Source: Podarcis bocagei (Eukaryota). From it: DNA of 64,000 bases. Made by a program: the position numbers and the translations under genes. The notes under the pieces are model-generated. The model was not told where the DNA came from. It saw only the letters and a program-made list of their open reading frames with translations, and ran no database searches. Below, piece by piece: positions 31,181-61,955 of the stretch; positions within the stretch are counted from its first letter, which is position 1, and every line of letters begins with the position of its first letter. The stretch is from assembly GCA_964188305.1 (NCBI GenBank), contig OZ076885.1; one strand, 5' to 3'.

Positions 31181-31183
<3 letters not shown>

Positions 31184-37504: not shown

Positions 37505-37605
37505 TTAGGCCCACATGTCATCATAATCGCTGCTGCTGCTGTCAAATGAGCTGTTCCCAGGCCCAGCCTTGCAGTTCACCAAAGGTCTGGGGGAAGCTGT
37601 CGAAC
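37505..37605 (-). CDS. CD6: CD6 last coding exon (GSTASPRP...SSSSDYDDMWA*)
   Basis: Acceptor tttctttgcttcag|, C-terminal DYDD motif as in human DDYDDISAA*, TAA at 37507-37505. Confidence 0.92.
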
Positions 37606-38349
37606 CTGAAGCAAAGAAATGAGGGCATTTCAGGTCAGCTGCCAAGAAGAAGGAAGAAGCTCAGAAGGAAAAGATGCTGAGGGGGAAGCTGAGGTGCTTG
37701 GTGACCTAACTATCCAGCTGCGAAGCCTCTCTGGAGGTCTTGCTGGGTAATGAGGGAGAAAACTATCGGCTTCTCAGGGTGGAGAGCTCTGGCCCCTATT
37801 CTTCTCTCTTTAGGCGATCTTGCTCTGCTTGACCATCACTAGAGCCCTGCATTGTGGGCTGCAGTAATTGGCAGCCCTATATTTAGTTGAGGATGTGCGG
37901 CACCCACAGCCATTAACTGTCCCACAATAGGAATCCATTTTGTCTAAGCCACAGATGGCCACCTGGCAGCCTAGAGGTCAGACACGCCCTCCCCAAAGCA
38001 ATGCTATAAGGCCCCTGTCAGCTCTACTGAATTTTAATCAAATGTCTGGCCATGGTTTCATGTGGAATATTTTTCTTTAATGTTCCATCTCTCTTTTGTA
38101 TCTAACATGCAGGTACATTAGCAAATGTGTGTGTAACACAACGCCTGGCCATACATGCTCCATAACCGCAAAGCCTTAATTACCAGATGGTGTCAATTTC
38201 ATTACAGAGAATGACCTCACTTTTGAAGGGATCAGTTTGTGCTCGTCTCTGACGTTCAGAGTAGCTACAACCTTGTTTTATTTTGCGATGACCTTTGAAT
38301 GTGCTAGCTGACTAATTAAAGTTCCATTGATAACAATCCTACGCTTCAC

Positions 38350-38466
38350 CTCCAAAGGAAGGCTCGTTTCCTGGATGGCTTTCCTGCTTCTCTGGTTTCT
38401 GGATGTTCTCATACCAGTCTGCATCTCCAGAAGAGGTGCTGTCACTGTCTTCAGCTGCAGGTCCTG
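38350..38466 (-). CDS. CD6: CD6 penultimate exon (AGPAAEDSDSTSSGDADWYENIQKP...PSFG)
   Basis: This frame is not in the ORF track; translated by hand. Matches human [26 protein letters not shown] acceptor ttttctccag|cag|, donor GAG|gtgaag, 117 nt. Confidence 0.9.
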
Positions 38467-38578
38467 CTGGAGAAAACCAGGGACTTCATATGGCAGTGAG
38501 GAACTGGATCCAGCACAAGAAATCAGCAACAGCATCACAGTTACTATGCCCCCCTGAAAGATACAGAAAGGCTCTCAC

Positions 38579-38695
38579 CTGCTTGTGGATAGGCCTCTGA
38601 GGTGGGGTGCTTGTTGTCCCCCTCCTCGTGCATAGCTGGCATTGCAAAATTGTAACGGGGAGGGTCTTCATCAGTCACTCGGTTTCGAAGAGAAT
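38579..38695 (-). CDS. CD6: CD6 cytoplasmic exon (NSLRNRVTDEDPPRYNFAMPAMHEEG...YPQA)
   Basis: Matches human NSQRHRVTDEE...FQMPPLEEG. Acceptor cctgctttcag|, donor CAG|gtgaga, 117 nt. Confidence 0.9.
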
Positions 38696-39848
38696 CTGAA
38701 AGCAGGGGCCAAACAGACTTCATCATCAAGCTCCCAGATGCAGGGGAAGGGGAGAAGGAGGTTTCTTTCAAAACACAGGGGTAGGAGGATCCACAGAATA
38801 TCACTGTCACCCCCACCACCAAATGACTAAGGAGCACAAGTTGATTTGTCAGGAAAGTAGGCTATTATATATGCTGTATTCAAACAGCACACCTCTGAAC
38901 CATCAAACTTACAGATCCTTTAACCCTAAGTTCCCACAACTCTTAAAGTTTACAAGGTTTGCCCCTTGTGGCTTTTTGTGGTTTTCCCCCCCCCCCTTTC
39001 CAGGCAAACCAAAAGGGCAAAATTCCTCCTCAGGTCTGCCTGGGTGCCTTCCTGCTCCCTCCTTCCCCAGTCCTCTCCTGCTACCTCTCTGCCTTCATTC
39101 CCAACCTTGTCTCAACTAGCTGGGAGGGGCCAGTTGAATCCATGGGCTGCCCCTGCAGAGCATTTTCTGCTCCCTACGCAGTCCCTGCACGAACCCATTG
39201 ATGGGATTTTATTGGGGTGGGAATGAAGAAACACACTGGACACATACTCAGCTTCCTAAATGCAACCCCTAACAAACATTCAATTGCCTCTGAATGTGGA
39301 TTGCATAATAACCCAGGCATATAGATGTGGGGCACAGAAGTCTAACTTGCATCTCTTAGTAGAAAACCTGCACTTAATCTGCTTTTAAAGTTTGCAATGG
39401 GAAAATCTTCGGGGACTGTGGAGGGAGGGAGTTAGGGAAATAGCAGGTGGGCCAAGCGGCACCAAGGAACAGTAGTGGTGGAGAAGGAAGTGTTTAAAGA
39501 GCCTAACTAAATATTAAAATCAAAAGTGTGGCATGCAGTTTTGTCTGCATTTTTCCTTTAATACTGATCTAAGTCAGACTTCTGAAACTGCTGCTAGTCA
39601 AGCAGAGGGGTGTGTGTGAATATATACTGGGATATATTGGGGGGGGGAGTGGGTGGAATTTTGATTAGGAAAACAGCACAAAGGAAAGGGTTAAACACCC
39701 CCCAGTCCTGATCAAATCCTTTTGGCTCCCTTAAAGTAGAACCACAAAGGATCACGAGGGATTATCATGGATGTACAGCTTGGTCCAAAGAAGCTAGGAA
39801 GTTTCTGACAAGAAAGCAGTGTGTGCCTGGCAGTGGTGAGATGCTCAC

Positions 39849-39950
39849 TGTAGAAGGTAGACAGTTGCACAGGTGGTTTGCTGCTGAAATCATAGTGTTC
39901 ATAGTCGGAATCAGAGTCTTCACTAAGGGGCGTAGGCAGCACTGCCGTTG
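39849..39950 (-). CDS. CD6: CD6 cytoplasmic exon ([24 protein letters not shown])
   Basis: Near-identical to the hallmark CD6 motif [22 protein letters not shown]. Acceptor tccctttcag|, donor ACA|gtgagc, 102 nt. Confidence 0.95.
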
Positions 39951-41099
39951 CTGAAAGGGAGAAAGAAACATGAGTCCACTCGGGGAGAACCAGCAAGTGG
40001 AGCTATCAGGCAGGACTTCAGGGCACAAGTCCACGGTCAACGCAGAAATGCAGCAGGACTGACTTACTCTGGGCTACACCCAACCTTCTCTATCTGCTAC
40101 TGCCAGGGCTCTTGTGCCAGGGGATAGGTGAGTTTGATTGTTGCACAACATAGGAACCCAACACAACAGTTGCACTAGTTGAAACTCACATCACGGCAGA
40201 TTGCATGATCCGTCATGCAGCAAAGCTGCCAGCAACCTGCTTATGAATTCTCCAGCATAATAGCATTTCACTGGCACAAAATATTTCAACCATTTTATCA
40301 GATGCTTGAAATGCTGTCTTTGCTTGGCAGAGTAGATAGATAGCTTGTAGATAGACACAAACACAGAGAGACGTGAAGGAGAAATGTAACCAGTAAAATC
40401 AGAGGGAAACAAAATACAAAAAAATGACACTCTCAGACACTTACATTAAGTAACCATTCACAGAGCATTATTGATGATAAACACAAACGTCTTGGAATGG
40501 GTACTGGCATTTATACAATATTTAAAGTACTGTACCGTACAGTAGATTTTCTAGCTGTAGGCTTTTTTTGGAGTTATATTATCTATTTAAATGTTGTTGT
40601 TTTTTTTAAAAAATAACTATTTTTATGAAAATAAAATGGTTAAACTGAGAGGAATCCTGATAGGGACAATGTTATCAAAACAAACAGCATCACTGGTGGT
40701 GTGAGGCTGGTAATAACTGGGATTCAGTAGCAAATACCAGCTCTGAGGCAGGGACTTTCCTCAGGAAAACTGCCTGTTGTGATCCTGATAATTATAAAAC
40801 ACATCCAACCAGCAGCATTATTGGATAACTGCAGCAAAAAAGAGATTGGAATCATTACTGTGTCTCAGTAGCCATTATAAGGTGGGAGACACATGAGACA
40901 AGGGATAATATAGTGCTACCATTTCACTCCCAGCAGCCCATCAAGGACAGCCTTATGGGCTACTGTCTCGTAGATTCTGGCCCAAACCATCAAACATGGA
41001 AACTAGTAACTGCCAGGAAGACAGGAGAGGGTGGGGAGACAGGTGGTTGATGGAATAAGGGAGATACAAGTGATGCCAGCAAGCTATAACTTCCCATAC

Positions 41100-41228
41100 C
41101 TTCTTCTTTGGGGAGGTTTGTGGGGACTTGCTGATAGTTGTTGCGTGTTCCAGTGGCTGAGACTTGCATGATGTGATTTAGAAGGATGGGGGCAGCAGCT
41201 GAGGCACAGGGATTGGCACTATCTGCAA
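41100..41228 (-). CDS. CD6: CD6 cytoplasmic exon (VADSANPC...PILLNH...NNYQQVPTNLPKEE)
   Basis: Matches human PVMVNH...SNSYQPVPITIPKE. Acceptor atctgttttcag| (alternative AG gives start 41222), donor AAG|gtatgg. Confidence 0.9.
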
Positions 41229-43196
41229 CTGAAAACAGATATTTTATTCTGTAAGGATTCCCTTCAAAGGGACTTTGCACGCAGATAGGAGTTTGACTCT
41301 GACAACAGTGGAACTAGTGAGCCTGTGGCTTTCCAGATGTTGTCAGACTACAACTCCCATCATCCATGACCACTGGCTGGGCTGGGCTGATGGGAGGAGT
41401 CCAGCAACATCTAGAGGGCCACAGGTCCCTCATTCTATACAGGCTTCCCTTCCATTCCTCAGAGGGTGCTGAGGTGACATTCTCACAACCAACTTCCACA
41501 TGGTAATCGTATGAGTAACTATTGCGTTATCCGGGGCAGGGGGAAACCAACACCCATGCTGCCAACTGAGCAGTGGAAAAGTGAAATATTCCTCCAACAG
41601 ATGTGCTCTGTAAGAAAAGAATAGCATCTGCACATATTTACTATGGAAAGAGATGATAGTTTGGAAAGGTCCAAAGGAAATATAGGCCCTCCATAGTAAC
41701 TAAAGACAGTTTAGACATGACGTATCTGATTTTGCCGAATTTCCTTGCTTGCTCAACAACTTTGGGCAAAACATTTCACCCTGCTCTTTCTAGGTATAGT
41801 GAATTTTTAAGAGTGGGGTTTCGCAGGAAAAGCTCTGAAGCAAAAAGAAAAAAGGGTGTGGGTACTCAGACACCGAGCTTTAAATTGCAGGCTGCAGAGG
41901 AAAGTTAAGTGTTGATAAGCCCAAAGTTGCATGCCCGGGTAACATCATTCATTCACGTAAAAGAAGTAAACATGAAAGCATTTTCTGGTCATCGTACATA
42001 GCAAAATGACAACAATAAAATCCAACTGCAACCCCCCCCCCAAAGAAATCGTGATTTGACACAATTTCCATCTCATATTAAAAGCTTGAGAAAACAAAGA
42101 GGGTTTTGCCTGGCACTAAAAGGACAACAGAACAGGCACTTAGCGAACTTCCTCAGAGACAGCACCCTAGAAGTGGGGCACCACAACCAAGCAGGCCCCT
42201 TTCCCCTGTCTCAACCTGCCTCACCTCTGATGACAGGGGCACCTAGACAGGGCTGTCCTAATACCTTTTGGCCCCTGAGACAGACCCCAAAATGGCACCC
42301 CCATCCCTGCCAAGGAAGGAGGAGTGAGAGAAGATTGGAAACAATTGGGGTGGGGGTGAGGAGACAGATCAACGTTGGGATCTGCTGCTCCTGTGGATCC
42401 TGCCACCTGAGGCAGTTGCCTCACTTTACCTCATGGGCCAGACCTGCACTCAGAGGATGGTGTCTGAAGGACATTATAGTTATGCACCAGCACTCTGAAC
42501 TGTGTCTGGAAACAGACCTGGCATCAGTGTGGCTTTTTAAAGCAATGTGGAGATATGTTCTGTTCACCTGGTTGCAGTTAGCAGCTTTGCGATTGTGTGT
42601 AGCACATAATAATAATTTTTTTGCATGTAAATGTTTCAAAAGGGGGCCAAGAAGTAAGGATATGCTACTAAACTATAGGGACAAACATCTGCCAAAATGA
42701 CAGCCCGCAGGCTGGCTGAATGTTGCATCTTTAAAGCAAACGAAATGAGTTTCCGACATGAATCCATATAACCAAATGCCCATAACAGGGGAGAGATAGA
42801 GCACCGAGAGATAGTGGCTCAATTATGCACTTTTCTCTGAGAGGCTTCTAAGTCTCATTTGCAATCAACCCTTCTTCTTGAAATCTATCTGCACTCTCCT
42901 TCAGATTTCAGGAAGCATTATAGACTTGTTATAAAGGAGGCTTCTGGAAGTGGCAGGGATACACTGAGGCTGAAAAACATTTGACAGCTCATGACAGCTT
43001 CTTGGTGGCAATATGAATTCATGGCAGGGACATTTTGCAGCATTTCTGATTCCTGCCAGGAAGGAATCTGGCATCTGGCTACTTCCTATAGTAGCTGTCC
43101 AAAACACAGTATATTATATCCACTCCACCAAATTCCCCATAGCATTATTTATACGTAGGTTTCCTCCCTCTGTAGTGCTGGTGATGCCCAGCATAC

Positions 43197-43346
43197 CAAT
43201 GGTACCATTTTTCCTTCGCCTGTGTCGCAAAACGGTGATAATTAGAGTCAGAATGGCCAAAAAAAGGAGAAGACCCAGGACGATGCAGAGAATTTGCAGT
43301 ATCTGGTATGATGGTCTAACATCTAAGTTCTCAGGTGCAGTCCAAC
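43197..43346 (-). CDS. CD6: CD6 transmembrane exon
   Basis: ...ILQILCIVLGLLLFLAILTLIITVL followed by basic stop-transfer RHRRRK. Acceptor tttccatttgcag|. Two in-frame donors: ATTG|gtatgc (end 43197) or AATG|gtacca (end 43206). Confidence 0.9.
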
Positions 43347-44470: not shown

Positions 44471-44886
44471 TCATCACAATGATTATGATTATGACTATTA
44501 AATTTATTAACCCTAAGGTCCCAGGGCAGGTTGCAATGTTAAAGCACAACACAATATGAAAGCCAATCTAAAACAACTTAGTAGCATGGCATAATTGTGG
44601 ATGAAGACTAGTCTTACTATTTGTTTCAGTTACCCAGCTGTGCATACAGTCCCTATGTCACCTAGAGGACACAGACCAGGAACAAGGGCTATATAAAGAT
44701 AACAGCAGGTGTGGTGTGGAAAGTTTAGAGGCTGGGTGTTTGTTCAGATGGGTACTGATCACACAGGCAGACAAGACCAAACAAGCTGAGATCATGATTT
44801 CATGCTACCTCCTTTTGTATTGCCTGAGCACAAACGGGAGATGCAATACTGTCTGCAAGAGGAAGTGCCTTGAGGCTTGAACTTAC

Positions 44887-44964
44887 GTGGACTGGTCAGG
44901 TGGGAGACTGGAGTCACTGCTTCTGTCGCTTGTGTGTTTGCAGGGCCCGCCAAACCCTGTGAGC
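44887..44964 (-). CDS. CD6: CD6 stalk exon (GSQGLAGPANTQATEAVTPVSHLTSP)
   Basis: Acceptor ttttctggatttcag|, donor CAC|gtaagt, 78 nt, phase 1-1, S/T/P-rich membrane-proximal stalk. Confidence 0.85.
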
Positions 44965-45725
44965 CTGAAATCCAGAAAAGAGCACAGAAGAGTAAAGAAC
45001 CAGCAACACCTAAGGACCGTATTAGTTTTGGGGTTAGAGAGCAGGAGACTGAGAAAGAGGGTCTAGACTGCATCTTCTCGGGATCCTGGGTGGGTGAGAA
45101 GGGCCCCCCCCCCGCTCCTGCTTTTTCCTCTTAGTCCCCCCCCATAGTTTTTACAATTCTGTTTTATTGTGATTTTAAGCAAATCAGCAGCAGCACAGGG
45201 AGAGCCAGAGACCCTCCCTCATTTGCAGATACCTTTGTATTGAGCTCAGGCAGACTAAGCAGCCTGTGTTGGTTTCATGTCAGCACCCGGCAGCCATGCA
45301 GATCAGCAGAAAACAGTGTTGGGTAAAGCGCATCGCAGGCTTGGGGTAAAACAGAGAGAACTGGAAGCTCCTTTAGGCTGTGATACATGTTGTGACAGCG
45401 GCTTCTGCACCATCAAACCAGCTACCTAGCTACTCTGCAACGCAGCCAGGGCATTTTCAGGTGGTGGGTGGGTCTGTTGCCAAGTGACATCTCAATCACC
45501 CCCTTTAGAGAAGCCAAACAGCATCATGGCATGAAGTCCCTACTGAAGCAGGGAAACCAGAAGGGACCCCTTGCTTGGGCCCTGTGGCTACTATCTGTAT
45601 TGGGCTGGCATGGCATAGATTTCAACCACTCCTCTTTCCATGCAAATCACTGCAAATTGTGGTGAAATGAATTCAATAATGGAAAAATGAGAAACCAAGA
45701 AAACTGAAATTGACAGATCCTGCTA

Positions 45726-47638: not shown

Positions 47639-47947
47639 CATTGCAGATCACACCAGCAGCTCCAAACTGGGCAGCGCACACATTGCTATTGTTGTAGAGC
47701 CAGCTGCAGCTGGCGAGCGAGTTTTCTGTTCCGGAGCAGTCATAGTACATCTTGCCCATCAGCGTGTGGTTGAAAGGCACTCTTGGGACTGAGGCCTTCT
47801 CACTGCAGTTCAATGAGTGACAGAGCACATCAGCCTCATCCTGGTACCAGTTGCCATCACACACAGTGTTCCAGGTGCCCCGGTAATAAACCTCCACTCG
47901 GCCGGCACAAGCATCTAGTCCTTCTGACAGCCGCCACTCCTGGTGCT
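47639..47947 (-). CDS. CD6: CD6 SRCR exon (equivalent of mammalian domain 3, CD166/ALCAM-binding)
   Basis: EHQEWRL...WNTVCDGNWYQDEADVLC...GKMYYDC...CSWLYNNSNVC...VICN matches human d3 (EHQSWRL...WNTVCDSEWY...RMYYSC...CSWRFNNSNLC). Acceptor acctccgcag|, donor ATG|gtaatt, 309 nt. Confidence 0.95.
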
Positions 47948-49557: not shown

Positions 49558-49866
49558 CTGAACATATTACACCGGCATCTTCCTTGTGTCCACAGTCATG
49601 GTTCCTCTCGGATGGACAGTCCCACAGAAAAGACTCATTCCCCAAGCACTTCACTTCATCCAAATAGATGGGGCCTGTCCCCTTCTGGAAATGAGAGGCA
49701 ATAGGAGCCTGAAGAGCCCAGCCACAATGCAGTTGCAGGCACACAACTTCAGCATCAGTCAGGTCCCAGTTGTCATCACATATGGTGCCCCAGGTACCGT
49801 TGTATTCAACCTCCACTCTGCCAGAACAGTTGCTTCTTCCATCCACCAAACGTAGCCTCCGTGTTT
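49558..49866 (-). CDS. CD6: CD6 SRCR exon (equivalent of mammalian domain 2)
   Basis: [20 protein letters not shown]...[14 protein letters not shown]...CGWALQA...[14 protein letters not shown] matches human CD6 d2 (LRLVDGGGACAGRVEM...[12 protein letters not shown]). Acceptor ctttcctacag|, donor CAG|gtcagc, 309 nt. Confidence 0.95.
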
Positions 49867-51340
49867 CTGTAGGAAAGATGCAGAGAAGAGTTGGATCAGA
49901 AGTCACACAGTGGGAGAACAAAGAAATAGAAGGGTGGGTGGGGATGGATGGATGGATAGATAGATATCTAAATTTACAGATCTAAATTTAATATAGTACA
50001 ACTTGCTAAAACAGCAAGGCAAAGAAATCCCATACATTCCAAAGCTCCGAACATCCTTATGTTACTTGGGAAATTCAGATCTGGCATGGATAGATACATG
50101 TATGAAGCTGATGTATTGAGTTGGTTCATGCATGCCTGTCCATCACTTGATGACTCACAGGTAGGAATGGTCCTCACAGATATATCCATGGTTTTATCTT
50201 ACTAAACATTTACACAAGTGCAACAACTTTTGGCTGCAGAATGTAAGTCCCCCACCATCTCCTCTCCCCATGCAGCCCCACCCAAATCTGCTTGGGTTTT
50301 CCCCCAACTCGGGGGTGCATGGGGAAAGGAGAGGGTGGGGAACTTACATTGTGCAGCTAAAAGATGTTGCACTAGCATTACTAAACAGTTGGATACCTCC
50401 CACCGATAGAACTTTCATATCCCCTCATTTCCCCTCACTTTGCAATGAGGGCTTCCTTCCCCGCAAATGAATCAGTTTGTCATATTCAGCTGCCAATTAT
50501 TCAGGTCCAGTTCACACATGCAGCAAAATAAGATGGGGGAGTCAGGTGGTTGCATGGACTGCAGCTCAGTCTGCATGTATTAAAAAAGAAGAAAAACTAC
50601 CGTAACAACACCAAAATAAATGCTTACTGACAGAAAACCAGTGCAAAGTTCTTGACTTAGAACCATTCTCCTCAGTTTGCTACGTGCAGGAAGTTAAAAG
50701 CAAAAGTGTGGAAAAGCCATTGAAAGTGGTATCCCCACCTGCAATTTGAGGATTCTACCAACTTGTTCTGTTGCATAGGTAGATGGGGCCACATTGCTAA
50801 GTAATCAAGGTCTGGTGTGCACATGCAGCAGAATAAGGTAGCAGAATTCTGGAGGGGCAAGGGGGATTGTACCACCTCAGACAGTAGGTAGAAGGATGGC
50901 ATTTTTGTTTGCTTTTCCGTGTATCAAATTTCCTGCAATTAAAACAACAACAACTAGCTCATCACGGAGAAAGGTCTCAGCCCTACCCTCTGCTGTGCCA
51001 CTTTCCTGACTGCAGAGTGTTCAGGTTTGGGATTTTTTTAATACACATATTGAAAAATATGGTTCCCCCACCTGCGGTATGAATTGATACAGCTCACTCT
51101 ACCACCTCAGGACGCTTCCAGCTCATTGCCACATCATTCTGCTCTGCATGTACAGTAGGTCCAAGTTATGAGAAATCAAGTGATAGAATTGCATGTGGGA
51201 ATGTTACCGACCCTGTGATGTTTCCGATTCTATAGCTAATGAGATAACCGGAATCCAAGAGTTGGGGAAATACAGACTGGTCCACCCACTTTTTTTTCTA
51301 TCTGAGAGGCATTCTCAGTATAGCATGGTGAAAAAGAACG

Positions 51341-51540
51341 CCGTAGCTCAGCGGAAAAGCATCTGCTTTGCACTCAGAACTTCCCTAGGTTCAATCTCTT
51401 GCATCTCCGGGTAGGACTGGGAATTATCCCCCTGCCTGAAACTCTGGAGAGCTGCTGCCGGTCAGTGTAGACAGCACTGAACTAGATGGACCAGTGGCCT
51501 TACTGTGTATAAGACTGCCTGCTCTGCTCCTATGTTCCTA
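51341..51540 (+). mobile_element. Squamate tRNA-derived SINE
   Basis: A/B-box head cgtagctcag..ggttcaatc, tail tcctatgttccta; partial relatives near 26540-26650 and 36495-36680. Confidence 0.8.
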
Positions 51541-51743
51541 AGGCATCTCGGCCTGAGGCTGTCTGGAGGGGAGCCTATTTGTTTCCTTCAGAGCTCTGCA
51601 CACAGATACATCTTTCCTCCCTCAGTCATGATTCATGAAACCAGCATGGGAGAAAAGTATGTGTGGGTTGAACACTCATAAAAAATACTATTGGCCTGGG
51701 CTCTGTACTGTATTCAGAGATTTGCAGTATTTCCAGGATTAAA

Positions 51744-51748
51744 ACACA

Positions 51749-51814
<66 letters not shown>
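51744..51814. repeat. (CA)n(GA)n microsatellite
   Basis: Seen directly. Confidence 0.95.
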
Positions 51815-51819
<5 letters not shown>

Positions 51820-53509
51820 CCAAAGCTCACAACTGTACGTGGGGCTTCAATATGGTACAGGCTCATTGAAGACAGTGACAATATTGATCCTGCCAAGAGA
51901 GCCAATCCTGGCTTATGTTGCTACAGAAATTGCCTGAGATTCAGCCAATCAGTTCAGGATAGGGGGTCCATATGCCTTTTTTTACAGTCCTCCATTTGAA
52001 AGCCTGTCAGAAGAGAGTCCCCAACTTGGTGGCCTTCAGATATTTTGGACTACAGGAATGGTCCATGGTCAAGGGTGGAGGGAGTTGCAGTCATACAACA
52101 TCTGAAGGGCACCAGGTAGGAGAAAGACAGTCCTCTGTTTGGCTGAGTCCTCTACATGAAGTGCTGTCTGATTTAAAAGAACCATAAGAAGGGAAAGTGG
52201 GGGGTGCGGGAGGCTTGAGGTGGCCCCTCGGCAGTTAAAGCCCCTGGACACCAGAAACGCATCTCACCTGGTCACAATCTTCCCCACAATGGTGAGATGG
52301 ACTTTATTTCTCTTTAGATTATACCAGTTGTGTCTAAACTTGCACCCCTACAGATGAATTAACATATGCAAATATTAGGCAGATTTGCATCCTCTCTTTT
52401 TTTAGTGATGAATAAGTGACTCCCCTAGTCCAGGAAGTGGGTGCGATAGAAAAAAAAGCACATCAACCTCAACTCTGCTCTATCCGTGGGCTGGGTGCAA
52501 CACAATTTGCCACCCACACAACTTCCTGCCCCTTTGATGAAAATGTCACTGAGGTGAGTGCACACGGAGCTCAGGTAACCTCAAAAACCAGTGCTGAGGT
52601 AAGCTCTGCTCCCTGGGAGGAATCCCAGCAGGTGGGGGCTGGCCTGGGCCATTTTTGCACAACTTGGAGACTATTGTAAGTTGACCGCCCCACCCTGTCT
52701 CTGCCCTATATGCAAGCAGGCTAATGGGAACTGAATACAAGACCATCCAGACTCCAAAACAAAAGGTGCACAATTATGTCTTAGGGTGGTGTCTACTCTG
52801 AACCGTATGTGTTCCATCATCTCCCAGATCCAAGAAGTGGGGTGAAAGATGTGCTGATCAGAATCTGTACATCCTCATGTCCTTATCTTTGTGAAGAAGC
52901 CAATCCACTCTGAATATCATTCCTGCAGTTCTTGATAGATTAGCCCTTCGGGATATCATGCTTGCTCTTCATATGTAAGTTAAGGCGTCTGACATTTGCA
53001 AGCAGAGCTAACATGCCGCTATGAGATGTAGTGTGTCTGGTTAATAAGGCTGTGCTTTTTGTGAACCTGATGCCACGGGCAGATGCAAGGATGTATGTAC
53101 AGAAACCCTATTCCTAATACTATGCCCATCAAACGATAAATCAAATTGCTTACTTCCTAATTACCTGGCCCTTCTCTAAGCAATCCATTGCTTATTCTTC
53201 TTCCTCGATGTACCTGTTCTTGCCAACTTGGCAATTAGACTACCCAATGCTCTGCCCATCAATATCTGATTCAGCTGCATCAAATGCTAGATAAGACTTG
53301 GAGTAAAAGAAAGATTCAAAAGCACTTGCTTTGGATCAGGGCCGTGTTTTGTAACCAGCAAGGAATAGACCTGGCTAACTTATAGCCTAGGGAATAGAGA
53401 GGCTGGAAAGTGGAGAGGCATAGCTCTCTCAAGAGGGGTCTCTCAATGCAAACTGTCAAAAGGTGAGTTACCTTTCTGGTTATCCCCCATCGAAGCAATC
53501 ACAATTAAG

Positions 53510-54600
53510 AGAGTTAATATGGATAGACAATGGGCGACCTACAGGGAATTGCTGGACTTTGCAGGGGGCAAACCCAGACTAAAACCTATGGAGAACTTAA
53601 GAAGCCATGTTATAGATTGGTTACAATACCACCAGATATATGATAGGTTTAAAGTAGACAAAAAAGGGGGGAGGGGTTGGACCAAAGCTCACAATTTGAA
53701 AAAGAACTGTTACAAAATAAGGATAAACATCTGTCTAAAATGTATATCTTCTTATTAGAATGGGAAACAAAATACAAGCTAGTTAAAGCATCCATGACAC
53801 ACTGGGCAATAGATATAGGACACAATATAGACCTAAACCTCTGGGAAAAACTTTGGAAAAGTGATCTGAAATTTACTGCGCGTTATTTGCTGAAAGAGAA
53901 TTATTTGAAAATGATTCATAAATGGTATTTAAAACCAAGTAGGTTGGCAAAGGTGTATAGAGCAGAATTAGAAACATACTGGAAATGTAAAGAAATGGGA
54001 GGAACTTTTTTTTTTGTGGTGGACATGCAGATAGGTGAAAGAATATTGGGAAATGATATATAATGAGCTGAAAAAATGTTTAAATTTACCTTCCCCCCAA
54101 AAACCAGAGTCCTTTTCATTGGGAATAACCTATACAGAAATTCCTAAGTGCCAGAAAAGTTTGTTCATGTATACAACAACAGTGGCCTGTGTTTTGTTGG
54201 CCCCAAAATGGAAAGTGAGTGAGGTGCCTTTTAAAGAGGATTGTCAACTTAAGATGTTAGAATATGCAAAACTTGCAGGTTTAACCCACAGAATAAGACA
54301 GCAAGAAGAACGTATATTTAAAGAAGAGTGGAAAATATTTATTGAATATATGGAAAATGATTGTACATAACTGAAAACGCTGGAATCATTAAAATAAATT
54401 CAACAGAGTAAATAATATTTGATTGATGTAAAAGTGGAAAATTGATTTGAACAGTTACAGTACAATATGTGGGAAACTATGATATGCAATATGAACCATG
54501 GAAGGAGAAGAAGGGAAGTCATTGGATATTTCAAAGTTTGTAAAATGTTTAATAGTTATATAGAAAAATGAAAATTCAATTAAAAAATATCTTAAAAAAA
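53510..54600 (+). mobile_element. L1-clade LINE 3' fragment (decayed ORF2 C-terminus), antisense in CD6 intron 2
   Basis: Frameshifted LSKMY..WAIDIG..LWEKLW..KMIHKWYLKPSRL..WKCKEMGGTF..YWEMI..LLAPKWK; A-rich end near 54580-54600. Confidence 0.85.
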
Positions 54601-54817
54601 CACTATCAAAGTGAGTTGAAGGAGGAGGTGATTGACGGTTGATCCTGATGTGTTCACCATGTCATCACCCACACCCAATTGGATCTGCCCAGCACCTGAC
54701 GCTCAGCTGGTACTGAATAAATATACAGTATTAGTAGTAAAAATGGCCTTACGAACCAGCCACGCGGAAACACACCACAGATAGAAAAGGGCTTAGCCTA
54801 CCCTTTCGTATTCTTAC

Positions 54818-54886
54818 CTGGCTCTGCAGTTGGGCTGCCTTCAGTGCTGTTTCCAATGGCAGGAGACGTGGTTGGCTTTGCCTGGA
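54818..54886 (-). CDS. CD6: CD6 exon 2 (end of leader and N-terminal spacer, VQAKPTTSPAIGNSTEGSPTAEP)
   Basis: Acceptor tgtttttgtttcag|, donor CAG|gtaaga, 69 nt, phase 1-1, N-glycosylation sequon NST; resembles the human CD6 N-terminal spacer ending in EPG. Confidence 0.8.
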
Positions 54887-55632
54887 CTGAAACAAAAACA
54901 GACAAGATTTGGAAGTGAATAATCACAGGTGTCTGATTCCAAGACTCCAGCGCAAAAAGTGCACATCATCAGGGTGGGGTGGAGGGAAGAACCAGGGAGC
55001 AATGCCCTAGGTGATATGAAGTGTCTCTGCTGAATATAATTAAGTGCTAGTTAGAATTCGTATGATTGGTAAATACTTCTTGAGAGATCAAACTGTGCAG
55101 CTGGAATATTTTTGGAGGCTCTTTTCTAGCTGGAGAGCTAGTTTTAGGGCAAGCTATCCATTTCAATGTCACTCAGTTCCTCAATTTTCAATTCTTAAGT
55201 TCAGTTCATCCACATCAGTATGTGAATTATCCCCACCCCTCTCCAGGCCTCATGAAAATTTGTCAGCACTTTTGTGTTCATTTCTGCTAACACAGACACT
55301 TCTGTGTGTAATTTTGCCTAATATACATGTTGTTGCAAGCACTTACCCCCTAACATAATGCATTTTTGTATATTATTTACACTGATATATGCATTTCGCC
55401 TTATAAAGGCATTTTCGTACACCTTTCTCAGTTGAAGAACCGCATCGCAAATTTTTCAGAAGTGTGAATTTCAAAGGATGGCTGCGTTTCAGTTTGAACC
55501 AACTTTCTGCCCCATTTCTATTCCCTCAGCTGATACTGATTAAATGTACAGTAGTTGTAAAAATGGCCTTATGAAACAGCCCTGGAAAAACTACCAAAGA
55601 TATAAAAGGGTTTAGCTGTTCAGTACGTAATA

Positions 55633-55860
55633 CAGTGGTACCTCGGTTTACAAACTTAATCCGTTCTGGAAGTCCGTTCTTAAACCGAAACCGTTCTTAA
55701 ACTGAGGTGCGCTTTCCCTAATGAGTCCTCCCTTCTACAGTTCGGCTTCCGTTCTTAGACCGAGGTAAAGTTCGCAAACCGGGACACTACTTCTGGTTTT
55801 GTGGAGTTCGTAAACCGAATAGTTCGTAAACAGGACTGTTCTTAAACCAAGGTACCACTG
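55633..55860. mobile_element. Tigger-like MITE
   Basis: TA|cagtggtacctcgg ... aaggtaccactg|TA. Confidence 0.9.
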
Positions 55861-57056
55861 TATCTCTTTTCATAAATATAAAAAGTTCAGTATCTTCTTG
55901 CATTCAACAAGCATATAAAACCCACAGGGATAAAATACAATGCTACCAAAATGCAGTTCCTTGTGGAAACTGCACATAAACTGTTGGTTCCAAAAATCAA
56001 TCTTAAAAGTAGAGATTGCAGCAGGAGGGATGACTCTTAGATGCGTATATTATTAACACAGAGTTAAAATACAGTCTCAGTGGAATCTGATTTTTGATAC
56101 ATTTTTCTTTTCATTTTTTCCTGGAAATTTATTTTTTAAAGTATGTTAAGTGATCATATTTGCATTGATAAATGAAAATTTCAATTTAAATGAAACTGCC
56201 TTATAAATATAAACTTATTCTTCACTATTCAAATCCTTGATATTTATTCCAGTGGATTTGAAGCCAGCATACTGTTCTTTTATTTTGTCTGTTGCTGAAA
56301 ATCAGAAAATATTTTGTAAAACAATATTTACAGTTTACACCAGCCCTGAATTACATGAAACGTGAAATAACAACATTAAGCAAATCGGCATTGCGAAACT
56401 CAAGTGCAAACAGCATATCAAGACCATCGGTGAAATTATCATATCTGTATCAAATGCAGCTTTTAGAGCCAGTCTTCAATTTCATGCACTACCACCACAA
56501 AATTGAGTTTCACAATTTGGGGAATATTTAAAATGTTATAGAACATCTATTAATATTTACAACTCAGTTACCCAAGATGCCTTTTCCTTTTGTGACATTT
56601 CGGCCATTGTCAACGAGAATGCTACAAAAATGGCACCACATCTGTTTAAACCTCTGATTTGATGAATGATTTCTATATTCTTCATGAAATGTAGATGGAT
56701 GGTATCATAGGCTGCTTCTCGACAGGCAATTCTCAACACTCTGTGTTCATTGCTCTTTGTCTACATGCAGAATTGCAGCAGTGTTTCTACACTTGCAAAG
56801 TTTTGTGTTTTGTGCGTGTTGAACTTCATGCGATGTCCTTCCACGTGTTCGCAAGCTTCCTTCCCACAATTGCTGAGGAATCAAGGACCGATCATAAAAA
56901 TATTACTATGTTGTCTGGACACCCTGTAAAAACTGTGAATTAATGACGCATGACAATTCCAAAACAAATACCTTGTCTCGGAGCAACTATAGTCAGCTTT
57001 CTGTTGTCCAAACAGATGCCCTTGGAATGCAGGGTGAGATTTATTGGCTGGCTGGT

Positions 57057-57153
57057 TGTGTGTGTGTGTGTGCATGTGTGCACGTGCACACGCACACACA
57101 TGTGCGCAGAGAGGGGTCTGGATGTAAGATTTAGCCATTTATTTAAAAATTAA

Positions 57154-57197
<44 letters not shown>

Positions 57198-57213
57198 ACA
57201 CACACACACACAC
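57057..57213. repeat. (TG)n / (CA)n microsatellites, self-complementary
   Basis: Seen directly. Confidence 0.9.
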
Positions 57214-57461
57214 ATGTATGCTCGGCCTTTTCTTCCCCAGCCACAGAACTATGTCACATCCACTAATGTGGATGGAACATTAGATGATGTTCACATGCAA
57301 AACTGTGACACTCCTAGCAGATAGGGAAGTCTGTTGCAATTCTGCACAGAGCTTACAATGGAAGAGTAATGAATGGATAGTGTTAGGAACTACCCACCTG
57401 GAAGGAACCTACATCATGTGGACCACCCCACCACTGCTGTAAAATATGAGTGAACAAGGTA

Positions 57462-57690
57462 CAGTGGTACCTCTGGTTAAGAACTTAATTTGTTCTGGAG
57501 GTCTGTTCTTAACCTGAAACTGTTCTTAACCCGAGGAACCACTTTAGCTAATGGGGCCTCCTCCCGTTGCTGCTGCACCGCCACCACACAATTTCTGTTC
57601 TCATCCTGAAGCAAAGTTCTTAACCCGAGGTACTATTTCTGGGTTAGCGGAGTCTGTAACCTGAAGTGTCTGTAACCCGAGGTACCACTG
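57462..57690. mobile_element. Tigger/pogo-like MITE (inverted relative to 5683 copy)
   Basis: TA-flanked cagtggtacctc TIRs. Confidence 0.9.
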
Positions 57691-58885
57691 TATAGCAAAT
57701 CCACAATGAACACCTCATCTGGAAGCAGTAATAGACAGCATCGCTTTTCTGCATAAACAAGCGACAAGAGTGGGGGTTGGGTTATGTATTAAGTTAAGCT
57801 AAGTCAGGAGTTTAACACTCCTGTTTTCAAGATGTTCTGGGGCAAATGCCCTTCTCTTCCCAGTCAAAGCGCAGAGAACCCAAAAGGTGCAGCAGATCAA
57901 TGAGAATTGACTTATTTTATTTGGTGTTTGGGTCCACCAGAATTAGAATGGCTAAGTTGTGCTCAAGGGAGAAGCAAACAGAAGTTGGTGTGTGACAGTA
58001 TACACTACCCACACAAACGGCATCATATACTTGGCAAACCCACTCCCAAAATGTACAAATCAGCTCTAATACACAAGCAGTACCTGCAGATATATAACAG
58101 GTAATTTTTTACTTATGAGATTTTCTGCAGGGAGGCGAAATCCAGATCATTTTTTTAAATAAAAAGAAGTTTGGTTAGCACTTTGATAATGACATTGTAT
58201 GGATGCTGAAAAAACTTGTGGGCGTGAGTACTACCAATTTCGCAACCAACTCCCATCTGAAAACATCCTAATTTTCAAATACAAACTCACAGATGAAACT
58301 GCAAGGAGAAATGCAGGCTAAACAGCAAGATCCTCCTTGTGACAATGTCTTTTACTTTAAACTTATACTAATGAAGCATGCTAGGAGCCAGCTGTAGACC
58401 AAATTTCACAAGGACAGGTCATTTGATTCTAAGCTTATAGCAAGTTTTACCCCCTATTTGTGTGAATAACAAATCCAACTATTCAGGTGCCACCACTCTT
58501 GCATAGTAATCAAACCACTCTAGGTCGCAATGGGAATTAATTTTCTATGTGGTTAACTGTTGAACTCATAGCCCCCCCACCCCATGACCTGAAGAGTGTT
58601 TAAAATGACTGACATGAACTGAGTGACATTCTTAGAGAATATTAATATATGTATGGATCGGCTGATGGTGGATTTGGCTTCACTGCTGCATAGACAGAAT
58701 AAGAAATAAGAACAATACTTTTTTCAGAACACAGGTCAGTTTTATGAATTTATAATGTACCGTAACCTGTTTGAATCAGTAGCTCCTGTTGCAAACAAGG
58801 AGCTCAATCCACCAACCATTGCTGATTACACAGATCTTTGTGTGAATCATCCCACACGTCTTTCTGTCCATGCAAACTCCACTAA

Positions 58886-58939
<54 letters not shown>

Positions 58940-59392
58940 TTATATCCCGCCCTCCCCAGCCGAAGCCAGGCTCAGAGCCGCTAACAACAATAAAAGTGAC
59001 AGTTTACATAAAATCACAATCAATTAATTGAAATGCATTCTAAAATCAATTCATTCTAAAATCAATTCAAAATCAAATTAATGACAACCATTGGGCTAGA
59101 GATCTGTGAGGATTACCGAAGGAGGGGGTCAGACTGTGCCTTGGCCAAAGGCCTGGTGGAACAGCTCTGTTTTGCAGGCCCTGCGGAAAGATGTCAAGTC
59201 CCGCAGGGCCCTAGTCTCTTTTGACAGAGCGTTCCACCAGATCGGGGCCACATCCGAAAAAGCCCTGGCTCTGGTTGAGGCCAGCCTAACCTCCCTGTGG
59301 CCTGGATCTCCAAGATGTTTTTATTTGAAGACCGTAGGGTCCTCCGTGGGACATACCAGGAGAGGCGGTCCAGTAGGTACGAGGGTCCTAGG
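58886..59392 (-). mobile_element. L2 LINE 3' end with (TAA)n tail
   Basis: (TAA)~17 then tttatatcccgccctcc; minus-strand peptide LGPSYLLDRLSWYVPRRTLRSS typical of the L2 ORF2 C-terminus. Confidence 0.85.
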
Positions 59393-60152
59393 CTAAACTC
59401 AAACCGTACAGCAGCAATGCCAATCACCTAGATTCAAGGAGGCCAATCCACATAATGGATGCTTCTACACACAAGTATCAGCTCCATCCTGGTGGTCCAA
59501 AATACCACTGTAGGAAGGACCTGCATCCTGCATCCCGTATCCCAGATTGCAGGACAAGTGCTTCTGCTCCATATGCATCCTAAGCACTTTCAGCTCAAAT
59601 GTCTCTGATCACATAAGGACCACTGATATGAATGACATGGTCGCTCCTCTAGTAGAGTCTGGGCAGTTCATCACTGACGCCATGCTATGCCCAACAGGAA
59701 GCAATCAGAGGCACAAGTTGCAAGGAGGCAGTGTCTATTTAAAATTGCAGGGGGCTTTGATGACCAAGGCTTGCATCTGAGGAGGGAAATGGGCAAATAT
59801 GTCAATTTCAGTTTCTCATTTTTCTAATCTAAGGCTCACTTCTCCACATTTCTACAGGAGCTTGTGATTTTTTTAATTAAAAAGTCTTTATGAAAATTCA
59901 TCAGCATTTGAGTATGGTTTATTGTGAAATGCAACCTCGACTGTCTTTTCTGATATGCTGTTATTATTAGTCCATGAAATCGGGGATACAGCTCTTAGAA
60001 TTGTAGCCTTGGAAAGCACCCCAAAGATCATGTGGTCCAACCCCTACAATGTAGGAATATGCAGCTGCCCCATACGGGGATTGAACTTGCAACCTTGGCA
60101 TTATCAGCACCATGCCCTAACCGATGGAGCTAGGTAGATCAATATTTTTATA

Positions 60153-60378
60153 CAGTGGTACCTCGGGTTAAGTACTTAATTCGTTCCGGAGGTCTGTTCT
60201 TAACCTGAAACTGTTCTTAACCTGAAGCACCACTTTAGCTAATGGGGCCTCCTGCTGCCGCTGCGCCACCGGAGCACGATTTCTGTTCTCATCCTGAAGC
60301 AAAGTTCTTAACCTGAGGTACTATTTCTGGGTTAGCAGAGTCTGTAACCTGAAGCGTATGTAACCCGAGGTACCACTG
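60153..60378. mobile_element. Tigger/pogo-like MITE
   Basis: TA-flanked cagtggtacctcgggtta TIRs, near-perfect. Confidence 0.9.
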
Positions 60379-60573
60379 TACAATGCTTTCTGGGGTAGAA
60401 AATGAGGTGCCGATACCCAAATATTCAGGAAAGCGCCATGGACGCCAGAACAAAATAGCTGTCATGGTCACCAAAATTCCCCGTTTTTAAATATATCTGC
60501 TGTAAGAAGCAGTGAATTGGACTTGTTTTTCTCGTGATATTGATTTTTTTTTATTGTTTCTTTATTATTTTTT

Positions 60574-60709
60574 CAGTGCTGTTTTTCTAGAGAACGAGGT
60601 GCCAGAACTCACCATGAACACCTCCCCCGTTCTCTTAGAATGGCAATGTCACCCACCTAAGATGTGCCATGACTGAGTTCCGGCAAGTTCTGGCTGAGAA
60701 AAAGCCCTG
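60574..60709. mobile_element. hAT-like MITE
   Basis: cagtgctgttttt ... aaaagccctg; near-TSD attttttt / atttttat; homologous to 6201-6339. Confidence 0.7.
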
Positions 60710-61794
60710 ATTTTTATCACTGCAAAATAAAATCCAATAATAATTTTTAAAAAATGATAGAAAGTCAGATACAAAGTCAATGGAGAAATAAAGCCCACCC
60801 TACTGTTTGTTCTGGCTCTCTGCTCAGCAGGTGTGTTAGCAGGGGATGTGGGTTTCCTGGGAAATCACTTAATTGGGCATGTTCAGTATCAAGAACGTTT
60901 TACAAAATCATCATTAAAAATGAGTCGGAAATGCACAAATGGTGAAAAAATCAGCGGGACTGATCTGCTGCAGACATATACCACTGAAGAGATGCTGTAC
61001 CCCTTTTGTCACATCACCAACTATCACTATTCCCCTGTCAATTGATTCAAAGCAAGTAGATTGGATAATTGAGCTTCAGATAATGAGAGATGTGCTATAT
61101 ATGCACCTTTGCTAGATATGTGCTATCAAACACTGAAGGAAACAACAGGATAGGAAGGAAGGAAACCTTTTATTATTCTCTCCTTATTTTACTTCTTCTT
61201 TTAAAAATAATACTAATCCCATTCTTCTAAAATGATTCATAGCAGCTTGCAACTAACTGACTACAAACAAGGAAACAATCAAAATCACACAACAAAACCA
61301 AAACTGCACATCTGCAGAAACAGAAAGATGCAAATCAGTATACTGTAATCAAAGCAGCAAAAAAAACACAAGAAAGCAGGAACAAATCGGTAAGTGTACA
61401 CACCATACAGCTAAAGCACATTGCTACATTGTACCACTCACAGTGCTACAATTCCCAGCACCCTTATCAAATTATAGTTCCCAGGACTCTTCGGAGGAAG
61501 TTACATGCTTTAAATGTTTGGTGTGTACGGAGGCAAAGGCAGGATTCACTGACCACAAAGCCTCCTTCAAGCACTAAGTTTTAACTTGGAGTCTGAAGAC
61601 TTTCTTGCCTGGGCCAGGGAGTGTCGTGGGGAGGGAGTGTCAGAAGGCTGGCACCACTACTCAAAAGTCCCTGCTCCTAGTGGGGACCCACTGAACTTGG
61701 TGGGAGCACATGGTGCAGCACCTCAGACGTTGAACCAATTGCACAAATGTGTTACTCTCTAATTTATATAGTAAGGAAACATTAATGAAATGTA

Positions 61795-61955
61795 GTGCGC
61801 TGCTCTGCTTCGCCAAAAGTGGCTTAGTCATGACCCGGAAGCTGTCTGCGGACAAACGCCGGCTCCCTCGGCCAATAAAGCGAGATGAGCGCCGCAACCC
61901 CAGAGTCGTTCACGACTGGACCTAATAGTCAGGGGTCCCTTTACCTTTACCTTTA
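61795..61955 (+). mobile_element. Sauria SINE 3' fragment
   Basis: ggctccctcggccaataaagcgagatgagcgccgcaaccccagagtcg..ggggtccctttacctttacc tail. Confidence 0.9.

What the first reader, a model, noticed from the sequence alone, without database searches (positions are those of the whole stretch)
49867..54817. CD6 appears to lack SRCR domain 1: a two-domain CD6
Seen: the 69-nt N-terminal exon (54818-54886) is followed by only two SRCR exons, matching mammalian d2 (49558-49866) and d3 (47639-47947). I found no SRCR-like frame (RL..G...C.G..EV, W...C...W, C..LGCG) in the 4.9-kb intron, in the ORF track or by eye, and none in 54887-64000. Exon 2 splices in frame to d2 (..AEP+E TRRLRL). Known: mammalian CD6 has three SRCRs; d3 binds CD166/ALCAM, and d1 carries the itolizumab epitope and is the proposed CD318 site. 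Inference: this lizard CD6 ectodomain is one domain shorter. That would change synapse geometry and could mean lineage-specific d1 loss or an ancestral two-domain CD6.
Basis: partly seen in the sequence, partly recalled or inferred. Interest (0 to 1): 0.75.

Follow-up and report, generated by a model that had tools for sequence, protein, structure and literature searches.

The report
Lizard CD6 lacks its first domain
This wall-lizard-like genome encodes a T-cell receptor CD6 with two instead of three outer domains, because the exon for the outermost domain was lost in the squamate lineage; most birds lost it separately.

Summary
On the minus strand, a 69-nt exon (54886-54818) is followed by two SRCR exons (49866-49558 and 47947-47639). 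These are orthologous to CD6 d2 and d3. No third SRCR reading frame exists in the 4.95-kb intron or up to 64000.

An RNA-like contig from a closely related lizard joins 54818 directly to 49866, with GT..AG ends. The region is collinear with an independent Lacerta agilis assembly. That CD6 gene, including all of its 21-kb intron 1, also holds only two SRCR exons.

No CD6 model from any squamate species sampled (geckos, skinks, a cordylid, lacertids, an amphisbaenian, iguanians, a monitor, snakes) has more than d2+d3. Turtles, alligator, kiwi, mammals, coelacanth and ray-finned fishes have d1+d2+d3. The turtle peptide homologous to the 69-nt exon lies before d1. So the exon is N-terminal, not an inter-domain linker. 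Three domains are ancestral, and squamates lost d1. Tuatara is unresolved.

Neognath birds lack d1 independently, and rattlesnake CD6 also lacks d3. I found no paper describing this, although the public gene models show it. It is a derived variant of a known receptor, of moderate interest.

The parts
54818..54886 (-). CD6 exon 2: 69 nt, phase 1-1. It encodes a Pro/Ser/Thr-rich N-terminal peptide with one N-X-T site, directly after the signal peptide.
   Evidence: AG/GT sites and open frame. 96% identical to Lacerta agilis CD6 residues 19-41, which follow its 18-aa signal-peptide exon. The homologous turtle and alligator peptide lies before d1. Covered by an RNA-like contig.
49867..54817 (-). 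Intron 2 (4951 nt), where the d1 exon lies in three-domain CD6 genes. It contains no SRCR-like frame.
   Evidence: HMM and tblastn scans were negative. A contig of run X1 skips it, with ends CT..AC on the + strand, which is GT..AG on the gene strand. It is collinear with Lacerta agilis intron 2 apart from one insertion in each species.
53049..54678 (.). Stretch of about 1.6 kb inside intron 2 that is absent from the Lacerta agilis orthologous intron. It is AT-rich and partly repeated in transcriptome contigs, so it is probably a transposable-element insertion.
   Evidence: Gap in the blastn collinearity between window 54679 and 53048, which meet at Lacerta 24215/24216. Depth peak at 54320-54519, with many contigs ending there.
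49558..49866 (-). SRCR exon orthologous to CD6 domain 2. It is the first SRCR of this protein.
   Evidence: Pfam SRCR 1.4e-32. Matches 5a2e_A residues 159-260. In the domain tree it lies outside the d1 and d3 clades (each 100/100), among the d2 domains, sister to the first SRCR of Lacerta. Covered by RNA-like contigs in X1, X2 and X3.
47639..47947 (-). SRCR exon orthologous to CD6 domain 3, the CD166/ALCAM-binding domain in mammals.
   Evidence: Pfam SRCR 6.3e-20. Matches 5a2e_A residues 262-360. Lies inside the d3 clade, 100/100.
44831..44968 (-). Stalk exon region. The bounds are those of the tblastn match, not exact exon ends.
   Evidence: tblastn with Podarcis muralis CD6 X1 residues 248-293.
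43207..43344 (-). Transmembrane exon region (approximate bounds).
   Evidence: 100% identical to Podarcis muralis CD6 residues 276-321.
37508..41232 (-). Five cytoplasmic-tail exons (about 41232-41101, 39951-39847, 38696-38580, 38467-38348, 37606-37508). They carry the conserved CD6 tail motifs, and the reading frame ends at the orthologous C-terminus.
   Evidence: tblastn matches at 95-98% identity to Podarcis muralis CD6. The motifs are invariant in the tail alignment A1.

Best explanation
The window carries exons 2 to the last of the CD6 orthologue of a lacertid lizard. It is 97-98% identical in protein to Podarcis CD6 over the exon 2-d2-d3 segment. Exon 1, which encodes the signal peptide, lies upstream of the window. 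The gene has no exon for SRCR domain 1. Exon 2 (the short glycosylated N-terminal peptide) is spliced directly, in phase 1, to the d2 exon, followed by d3, stalk, transmembrane segment and the CD6 cytoplasmic tail. The mature receptor therefore has a two-SRCR ectodomain (d2-d3).

This is a derived state shared by all sampled squamates. The d1 exon sits between exon 2 and d2 in turtles and is present in the proteins of mammals, and it was lost on the squamate stem. Whether the loss came before or after the split from tuatara is unknown. No recognisable remnant is left.

Shown: the exon structure, the splice, the absence of d1 coding sequence, the orthology of the two remaining domains, and the taxonomic distribution.

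Inferred: the protein keeps the d3-mediated CD166/ALCAM interaction and tail signalling; it lacks the d1 surface that binds CD318 and carries the itolizumab epitope in humans; and it reaches less far from the membrane.
For: - **Exons, splice sites and frame:**
- **d2 and d3 identity:**, plus the domain tree with d1 and d3 clades each at 100/100.
- **No other SRCR in the window upstream of d2:**
- **Spliced contig:** a 779-nt contig in run X1 joins 54818 to 49866, skipping 4951 nt with GT..AG ends.
- **Lacerta agilis locus L002:** exon 1, a 21-kb intron 1, exon 2, a 3.7-kb intron 2, d2, d3, and only two SRCR exons in 43.5 kb without N. Window 64000-47500 is collinear with it at 87-92% identity.
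- **Squamate models:** none has more than d2+d3. Sampled were Pogona, Anolis (2 species), Sceloporus, Phrynosoma, Phrynocephalus, Lacerta, Podarcis (3 species), Zootoca, Rhineura, Tiliqua, Hemicordylus, Gekko, Heteronotia, Paroedura, Sphaerodactylus, Euleptes, Python and Liasis. The longest isoforms are 500-551 aa, apart from one Gekko japonicus model of 760 aa that still shows only d2+d3.
- **Three-domain CD6 elsewhere:** several turtle species, alligator, kiwi, mammals, coelacanth, sturgeon, bichir, bowfin and salmon.
- **Turtle locus L003:** exon-2-like peptide at 9024-9134, d1 at 9914-10291, d2 at 10885-11193, d3 at 11757-12065.
- **Tail:** intact, with conserved motifs.
Against: - The splice is seen in one contig of one run. 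The run's kind is only guessed to be RNA, and it comes from a close relative rather than the same individual: there are five differences in the d2 exon, three of them non-synonymous. The raw RNA-seq run X19 gave no reads on the exons.
- Exon 1 is outside the window, so the full 5' structure of this particular gene was not seen.
- Most orthologue evidence consists of automated gene models.
- A strongly diverged or rarely used cryptic exon cannot be formally excluded by profile searches.
- Tuatara has only a tail fragment available, so 'squamate stem' could in fact be 'lepidosaur stem'.
Confidence: 0.9

Rival explanations
1. A d1 exon exists but lies upstream of 64000, so the 69-nt exon would be a linker between d1 and d2.
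For: Exon 1 is not in the window, so 9 kb of intron 1 plus whatever lies further upstream is all that could be scanned here.
Against: In Lacerta agilis the whole 21-kb intron 1 is available and has no SRCR frame. There the signal-peptide exon is followed in the protein directly by the exon-2 peptide. The same holds in Python, Crotalus, Pogona, Anolis, Tiliqua and Sceloporus. In turtle and alligator the homologous peptide precedes d1. The X1 contig has only 27 nt upstream of exon 2.
Confidence: 0.02
2. Assembly artefact: the d1 exon was collapsed or dropped from this assembly.
For: None found.
Against: There is no N in the window. The intron is collinear with an independent chromosome-level Lacerta agilis assembly, apart from simple insertions. 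A transcript contig skips exactly this interval at canonical sites. All other squamate assemblies give the same two-domain gene.
Confidence: 0.02
3. Two SRCR domains are the ancestral CD6 state, and d1 was added in other lineages.
For: Two large sauropsid groups, squamates and neognath birds, have d2+d3 only.
Against: The first SRCR is typed d1 in mammals, turtles, alligator, kiwi, coelacanth and four ray-finned fishes. In the tree, turtle, alligator and mammal d1 form one clade at 100/100. Under the accepted amniote tree this needs one gain before bony vertebrates diverged, followed by losses.
Confidence: 0.02
4. A d1-equivalent exon persists in intron 2 but is too diverged for profiles, and is included only in a minor isoform.
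For: d1 is the fastest-evolving CD6 domain. It has long branches in the tree and the weakest SRCR scores of the three.
Against: No minus-strand stop-free piece in the intron exceeds 83 aa, and none has the Cys/Trp pattern. None of the isoforms listed for Pogona, Anolis, Podarcis, Rhineura, Paroedura or Crotalus adds an N-terminal domain. The d1 HMM still detects d2, d3 and the downstream SRCR exon, so it is sensitive to distant SRCRs.
Confidence: 0.04

Closest known systems
Mammalian CD6 (human CD6, structure 5A2E)
   Same: Orthologous d2 and d3 SRCR domains: 58% and 57% identity to a shrew CD6, with best placement on 5a2e_A residues 159-260 and 262-360. The exon logic is the same, one phase-1 exon per SRCR. 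It has a short glycosylated exon 2, a stalk, a single transmembrane segment, and a long tail with the acidic Tyr motifs conserved in every CD6 tail aligned.
   Different: It has no d1, the domain that binds CD318 and that itolizumab targets in humans (PMC11747410). The cytoplasmic tail also lacks a segment of roughly 60-80 aa that is present in mammals, turtles, alligator and birds.
Turtle, crocodilian and kiwi CD6
   Same: These are the closest non-squamate orthologues: 73%/67% identity to Chrysemys in d2/d3. The exon-2 peptide is homologous.
   Different: They keep a d1 exon. In Emydura it lies between exon 2 and d2.
Neognath bird CD6
   Same: The same d2+d3 architecture. In Pogoniulus the gap-free 5.2-kb gene has no d1 exon.
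   Different: The loss is independent, because kiwi and alligator keep d1. Birds keep the long tail segment that squamates lack.
Mammalian splice isoform CD6-delta-d3
   Same: A CD6 protein with one SRCR fewer. Lizard and snake models also include d3-less isoforms (Pogona X6/X7, an Anolis UniProt entry).
   Different: That isoform comes from alternative splicing of an intact gene and removes d3. Here the genome itself lacks the d1 exon, so the change is constitutive. The mammalian isoform is recalled from my own knowledge and was not tested here.

Membership tests
CD6 (T-cell differentiation antigen CD6) orthologue group | SRCR group B domain orthologous to CD6 d2 | tested here: met
   Best placement on 5a2e_A residues 159-260. 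It lies among the d2 domains, outside the d1 and d3 clades (each 100/100). 70-73% identical to turtle and alligator d2.
CD6 (T-cell differentiation antigen CD6) orthologue group | SRCR domain orthologous to CD6 d3, the membrane-proximal CD166-binding domain | tested here: met
   Matches 5a2e_A residues 262-360. Lies in the d3 clade at 100/100. Binding itself was not tested.
CD6 (T-cell differentiation antigen CD6) orthologue group | Three extracellular SRCR domains including the N-terminal d1, as in the textbook mammalian description (PMC11747410) | tested here: not met
   No d1 frame in the intron or upstream. A transcript contig splices exon 2 to d2. This unmet feature is the finding itself. 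Orthology rests on descent and not on domain count, so I file it as a derived variant of CD6.
CD6 (T-cell differentiation antigen CD6) orthologue group | Single transmembrane segment and long cytoplasmic tail with the conserved CD6 motifs | tested here: met
   Tail exons are 95-100% identical to Podarcis CD6 and the frame is open to the orthologous C-terminus. The motifs are invariant across nine CD6 tails. A profile of the tail recovers proteins that were named CD6 wherever names were looked up, from shark to mammals.
CD6 (T-cell differentiation antigen CD6) orthologue group | Conserved position: SLC15A3 upstream, CD5 downstream on the same strand | tested here: inconclusive
   A further SRCR exon lies downstream on the same strand at 1672-2064. 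It aligns over its longest stretch to CD5 domain 1 (2jop), but at E 1.6e-9 only. The upstream neighbour is outside the window. In the bird locus L004 the upstream gene has a PTR2 domain. Collinearity with the annotated Lacerta agilis CD6 locus is clear.
CD6 (T-cell differentiation antigen CD6) orthologue group | Expression on T lymphocytes | not testable with these tools
   Contigs of three RNA-like runs cover the exons, but tissue and cell type are not on record.

The most novel reading that the evidence does not exclude
CD6's ectodomain has been trimmed repeatedly and independently in sauropsids. d1 was lost in stem squamates and again within birds after the kiwi lineage split off. d3 was additionally lost in rattlesnakes, leaving a single-SRCR CD6. 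If these are real constitutive losses in functional T-cell receptors, then d2 plus the cytoplasmic tail is the only indispensable core of CD6. The CD318-d1 interaction, and in vipers the ALCAM-d3 interaction, would then be lineage-restricted and dispensable. That would give natural knock-outs for separating ligand-dependent from ligand-independent CD6 functions.
Probability: 0.4. Interest if true: 0.65.

Novelty: new variant of a known kind. Interest (0 to 1): 0.5.

Why it matters
CD6 is a drug target: itolizumab binds d1, and d1 is reported to bind CD318 (PMC11747410). Its biology is argued largely from mouse and human, where all three domains are present.

A whole order of reptiles runs T-cell immunity on a CD6 without d1, and most birds lost it in parallel. 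This shows that d1 is dispensable for whatever keeps CD6 under selection, and that d2, d3 and the tail form the conserved unit. It allows three concrete tests:
- whether squamate and neognath CDCP1/CD318 still binds CD6;
- whether ALCAM binding is retained by the shorter ectodomain;
- whether rattlesnake CD6, which has d2 only, has given up ALCAM.

It also matters for annotation. A two-SRCR CD6 model in squamates and neognath birds should be read as real and not as a truncated prediction. The finding is not a new kind of molecule, and the gene models that show it are already public.

Tried and rejected
- **Earlier scan notes:** no notes near this place, and no finding mentions CD6, SRCR or CD5.
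- **Exon 1 in the window:** tblastn with five squamate signal peptides found nothing credible on the minus strand upstream of 54886. By analogy with the 21-kb intron 1 of Lacerta agilis, exon 1 lies beyond 64000.
- **Weak d1-like matches:** window 63139-63032 at E 0.028, and 56884-57138 at E 3-7. They are short, lack the cysteine pattern and score at chance level. Pfam found nothing in 56884-57138. Rejected.
- **Raw RNA-seq run X19:** no reads on the exons, only on an intronic repeat. It is uninformative, since the tissue is unknown and only 12% of the run was read.
- **Tuatara:** only a 254-aa tail fragment exists in the collections (UniProt A0A8D0HX15), and no contig is on record for it. The timing relative to tuatara could not be settled.
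- **Loci that could not be fetched:** alligator, Rissa and Paroedura, because those exact products are not on record.
- **Literature:** six full-text searches found no description of a two-domain CD6 in reptiles or birds. The library lacks most subscription journals, so prior description cannot be excluded.
- **Not attempted:** conservation of individual ALCAM-contact residues in d3. No tool-derived human numbering was at hand, and I did not want to rely on memory.
Full report
**1. What is in the sequence**

The gene runs on the minus strand. Each has an AG acceptor and a GT donor. Joined in phase 1, they give one open frame that reads ...[17 protein letters not shown]... across the first junction. 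The window contains no N.

Pfam SRCR (PF00530) hits both 309-nt exons, at 1.4e-32 and 6.3e-20. Against solved structures, the first exon is placed on human CD6 (5a2e_A) residues 159-260, which is d2. The second is placed on residues 262-360, which is d3.

**2. Is there a third SRCR anywhere?**

I cut the whole window into six-frame stop-to-stop pieces of 20 aa or more (2244 pieces). I searched them with filters off, using three profiles:
- an HMM of the two local domains;
- a broad SRCR HMM rebuilt from the SRCR domains of the proteins fetched up to then;
- a d1-specific HMM built from two turtles, alligator and three mammals.

Each profile finds the same three pieces only: d2, d3 and a separate exon far downstream at 1672-2064(-). 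tblastn with the six d1 sequences adds nothing above chance.

Between 49982 and 64000 the longest minus-strand stop-free pieces are 126 and 122 aa. They have 0-1 Trp and 2-3 Cys. In the intron itself the longest piece is 83 aa. Pfam finds no SRCR in the eight longest pieces. So neither an intact d1 exon nor a recognisable decayed one is present.

**3. Is the splice real?**

Contigs of three small RNA-like runs from a closely related lizard ('organism A') cover the d2 exon. In run X1, one 779-nt contig (depth 12.5) lies with positions 28-99 on 54818-54889 and positions 100-408 on 49558-49866. It therefore skips 4951 nt whose ends are GT..AG on the gene strand.

A further 27 nt lie upstream and 371 nt downstream, off the stretch that was laid. 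No contig joins anything else to 49866.

There are caveats. This is one contig in one run, and the run's kind is only a guess. The contig differs from the window at five places in d2, two synonymous and three non-synonymous. At those three residues the contig agrees with Lacerta and Podarcis, so it comes from a relative or a different allele. The raw RNA-seq run X19 had no reads on the exons.

**4. Is it an assembly problem?**

The Lacerta agilis CD6 locus (L002, 43.5 kb, no N) comes from an independent chromosome-level assembly. Its layout is:
- exon 1 at 3001-3054;
- exon 2 at 24020-24088;
- d2 at about 27760-28070;
- d3 at 29748-30074.

Window 64000-47500 is collinear with it at 87-92% identity. 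Intron 2 differs only by a window-specific insertion of about 1.6 kb (54679-53048) and a Lacerta-specific stretch of about 0.4 kb. The whole Lacerta gene, including its complete 21-kb intron 1, holds only two SRCR exons.

This also explains why exon 1 is not in the window. It should lie roughly 20 kb upstream of 54886.

**5. Which gene and which species?**

All downstream exons (stalk, transmembrane, five tail exons down to 37508) are found at 95-100% identity to Podarcis muralis CD6, apart from the more variable stalk, and the frame is open. Over the exon 2-d2-d3 segment the window protein is 97-98% identical to CD6 of three Podarcis species. It is 93% identical to CD6 of Lacerta agilis and Zootoca. 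The window is therefore from a lacertid very close to Podarcis.

**6. Orthologues**

Because the word-based protein search filters by length, I chained three searches: d2 piece, then a 286-aa agamid fragment, then the CD6-specific tail of the Rhineura protein. I followed these with a profile search of the tail against all representatives, and looked up names. I counted and typed the domains with d1, d2 and d3 HMMs.

*Squamates.* No model has more than d2+d3. The species are Pogona, two Anolis, Sceloporus, Phrynosoma, Phrynocephalus, Lacerta, three Podarcis, Zootoca, Rhineura, Tiliqua, Hemicordylus, Gekko kuhli and G. japonicus, Heteronotia, Paroedura, Sphaerodactylus, Euleptes, Python and Liasis. 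The longest isoforms are 500-551 aa. The one longer model, Gekko japonicus at 760 aa, still shows only d2+d3. Where the N-terminus is complete, the order is signal peptide, exon-2 peptide, d2.

*Three-domain CD6.* d1+d2+d3 occurs in several turtle species, alligator, kiwi (three Apteryx species), echidna, eutherians, coelacanth, sturgeon, bichir, bowfin and salmon.

*The exon-2 peptide.* The turtle peptide VQANTTSPAVPWNITHGGHRNTSAEPG is the homologue of the lizard exon-2 peptide and lies before d1. In the Emydura genome the order is exon-2-like peptide (9024-9134), d1 (9914-10291), d2 (10885-11193), d3 (11757-12065). Hence the 69-nt exon is the N-terminal exon and not a d1-d2 linker.

**7. Domain tree**

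I built a maximum-likelihood tree of 41 SRCR domains (IQ-TREE, LG+C20). It separates a d1 clade (100/100) holding only turtle, alligator and mammal first domains, and a d3 clade (100/100) holding the window's 47947 exon. The window's 49866 exon lies outside both, among the d2 domains, sister to the first SRCR of Lacerta.

The tool warned about long branches inside the d1 clade. This affects relationships within d1, not the three-way split.

**8. Polarity**

d1 is present in ray-finned fishes, coelacanth, mammals, turtles, alligator and kiwi. So three domains are ancestral, and the squamate state is a loss.

Tuatara could not be scored, because only a tail fragment is available and no contig is on record.

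**9. Mechanism and consequences**

*Shown.* The locus encodes a type I receptor with a d2-d3 ectodomain and a CD6 tail that is intact, though shorter than in non-squamates (see section 10).

*Inferred from mammalian biology (PMC11747410).*
- The CD166/ALCAM site is on d3 and d3 is kept, so adhesion to ALCAM is probably retained.
- The CD318 site and the itolizumab epitope are on d1, so those properties are absent.
- The ectodomain is one SRCR shorter, and the glycosylated exon-2 peptide now caps d2.

None of this was tested.

**10. Beyond the finding**

Neognath birds also lack d1. This holds for models of two shorebirds, a barbet, parrots, a crow and a penguin. In Pogoniulus the gap-free 5.2-kb gene has no d1 exon. 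Kiwi and alligator keep d1, so this is a second, independent loss.

Rattlesnake CD6 (all four Crotalus tigris isoforms and the C. adamanteus model) has d2 only. In the gap-free 47-kb C. tigris locus, python d3 finds no d3 exon between d2 and the stalk exon.

Squamate tails also lack a segment of about 60-80 aa found in other amniotes.

**11. Novelty**

Six full-text searches found no paper describing a two-domain CD6 in reptiles or birds. The library lacks most subscription journals. The public gene models already display the architecture, so this is an unremarked feature of annotated genes and not a hidden one.

I rate it a new variant of a known kind, with moderate interest.

Noticed in passing
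L004 (Pogoniulus pusillus CD6 locus) 2001-7223; proteins P0261-P0263, P0269, P0273, P0278, P0268: Neognath bird CD6 models (shorebirds, barbet, parrots, crow, penguin) have d2+d3 only. The gap-free 5.2-kb barbet gene has no d1 exon. Kiwi (Apteryx) CD6 has d1+d2+d3. This looks like a second, independent loss of d1 inside birds.
   Followed up: partly
L005 (Crotalus tigris CD6 locus) 25578-32491; proteins P0256, P0424-P0427: Rattlesnake CD6 models have a single SRCR (d2). No d3 exon is detectable between d2 and the stalk exon in a 47-kb locus without N. Pythons (Liasis) keep d3. The ALCAM-binding domain may therefore be lost in vipers.
   Followed up: partly
Alignment A1, columns about 201-300; window tail exons 38696-38348: Squamate CD6 cytoplasmic tails lack a Ser/Pro-rich segment of about 60-80 aa that is present in turtle, alligator, bird and mammal tails. 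The flanking acidic Tyr motifs are invariant.
   Followed up: no
window 49724-49817: Five differences between the window and RNA-like contigs of organism A cluster within 94 nt of the d2 exon. Three change residues (T/A, E/G, L/R), and at all three the window differs from every other lacertid CD6 seen. This could be a derived allele, species-specific substitutions or a small conversion tract.
   Followed up: partly
window 51320-51519 and 54320-54519: Two short intronic stretches have very high summed depth in transcriptome contigs: 170-200 and 60-100, against 3-12 on the CD6 exons. Many contigs end inside them, so they are interspersed repeats transcribed elsewhere. A (CT)n(GT)n microsatellite lies at 51735-51824.
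   Followed up: no
window 1672-2064 (-): A further SRCR exon lies 35 kb downstream of the CD6 stop on the same strand. It aligns over its longest stretch to CD5 domain 1 (2jop, E 1.6e-9). It is probably the first SRCR exon of CD5, as expected from the CD6-CD5 tandem arrangement, which I recall from my own knowledge.
   Followed up: partly
proteins P0243, P0244, P0246, P0251, P0254: Pogona and Anolis have predicted isoforms with d2 only (d3 skipped). They resemble the mammalian CD6-delta-d3 splice form.
   Followed up: no
proteins P0400, P0402, P0403, P0282, P0331: The longest available CD6 models of bilby, lungfish and axolotl, plus models of a caecilian and a shark, show d1+d2 but no third SRCR, even with the broad SRCR profile. 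Either d3 is lost or very diverged there, or the models are incomplete.
   Followed up: no
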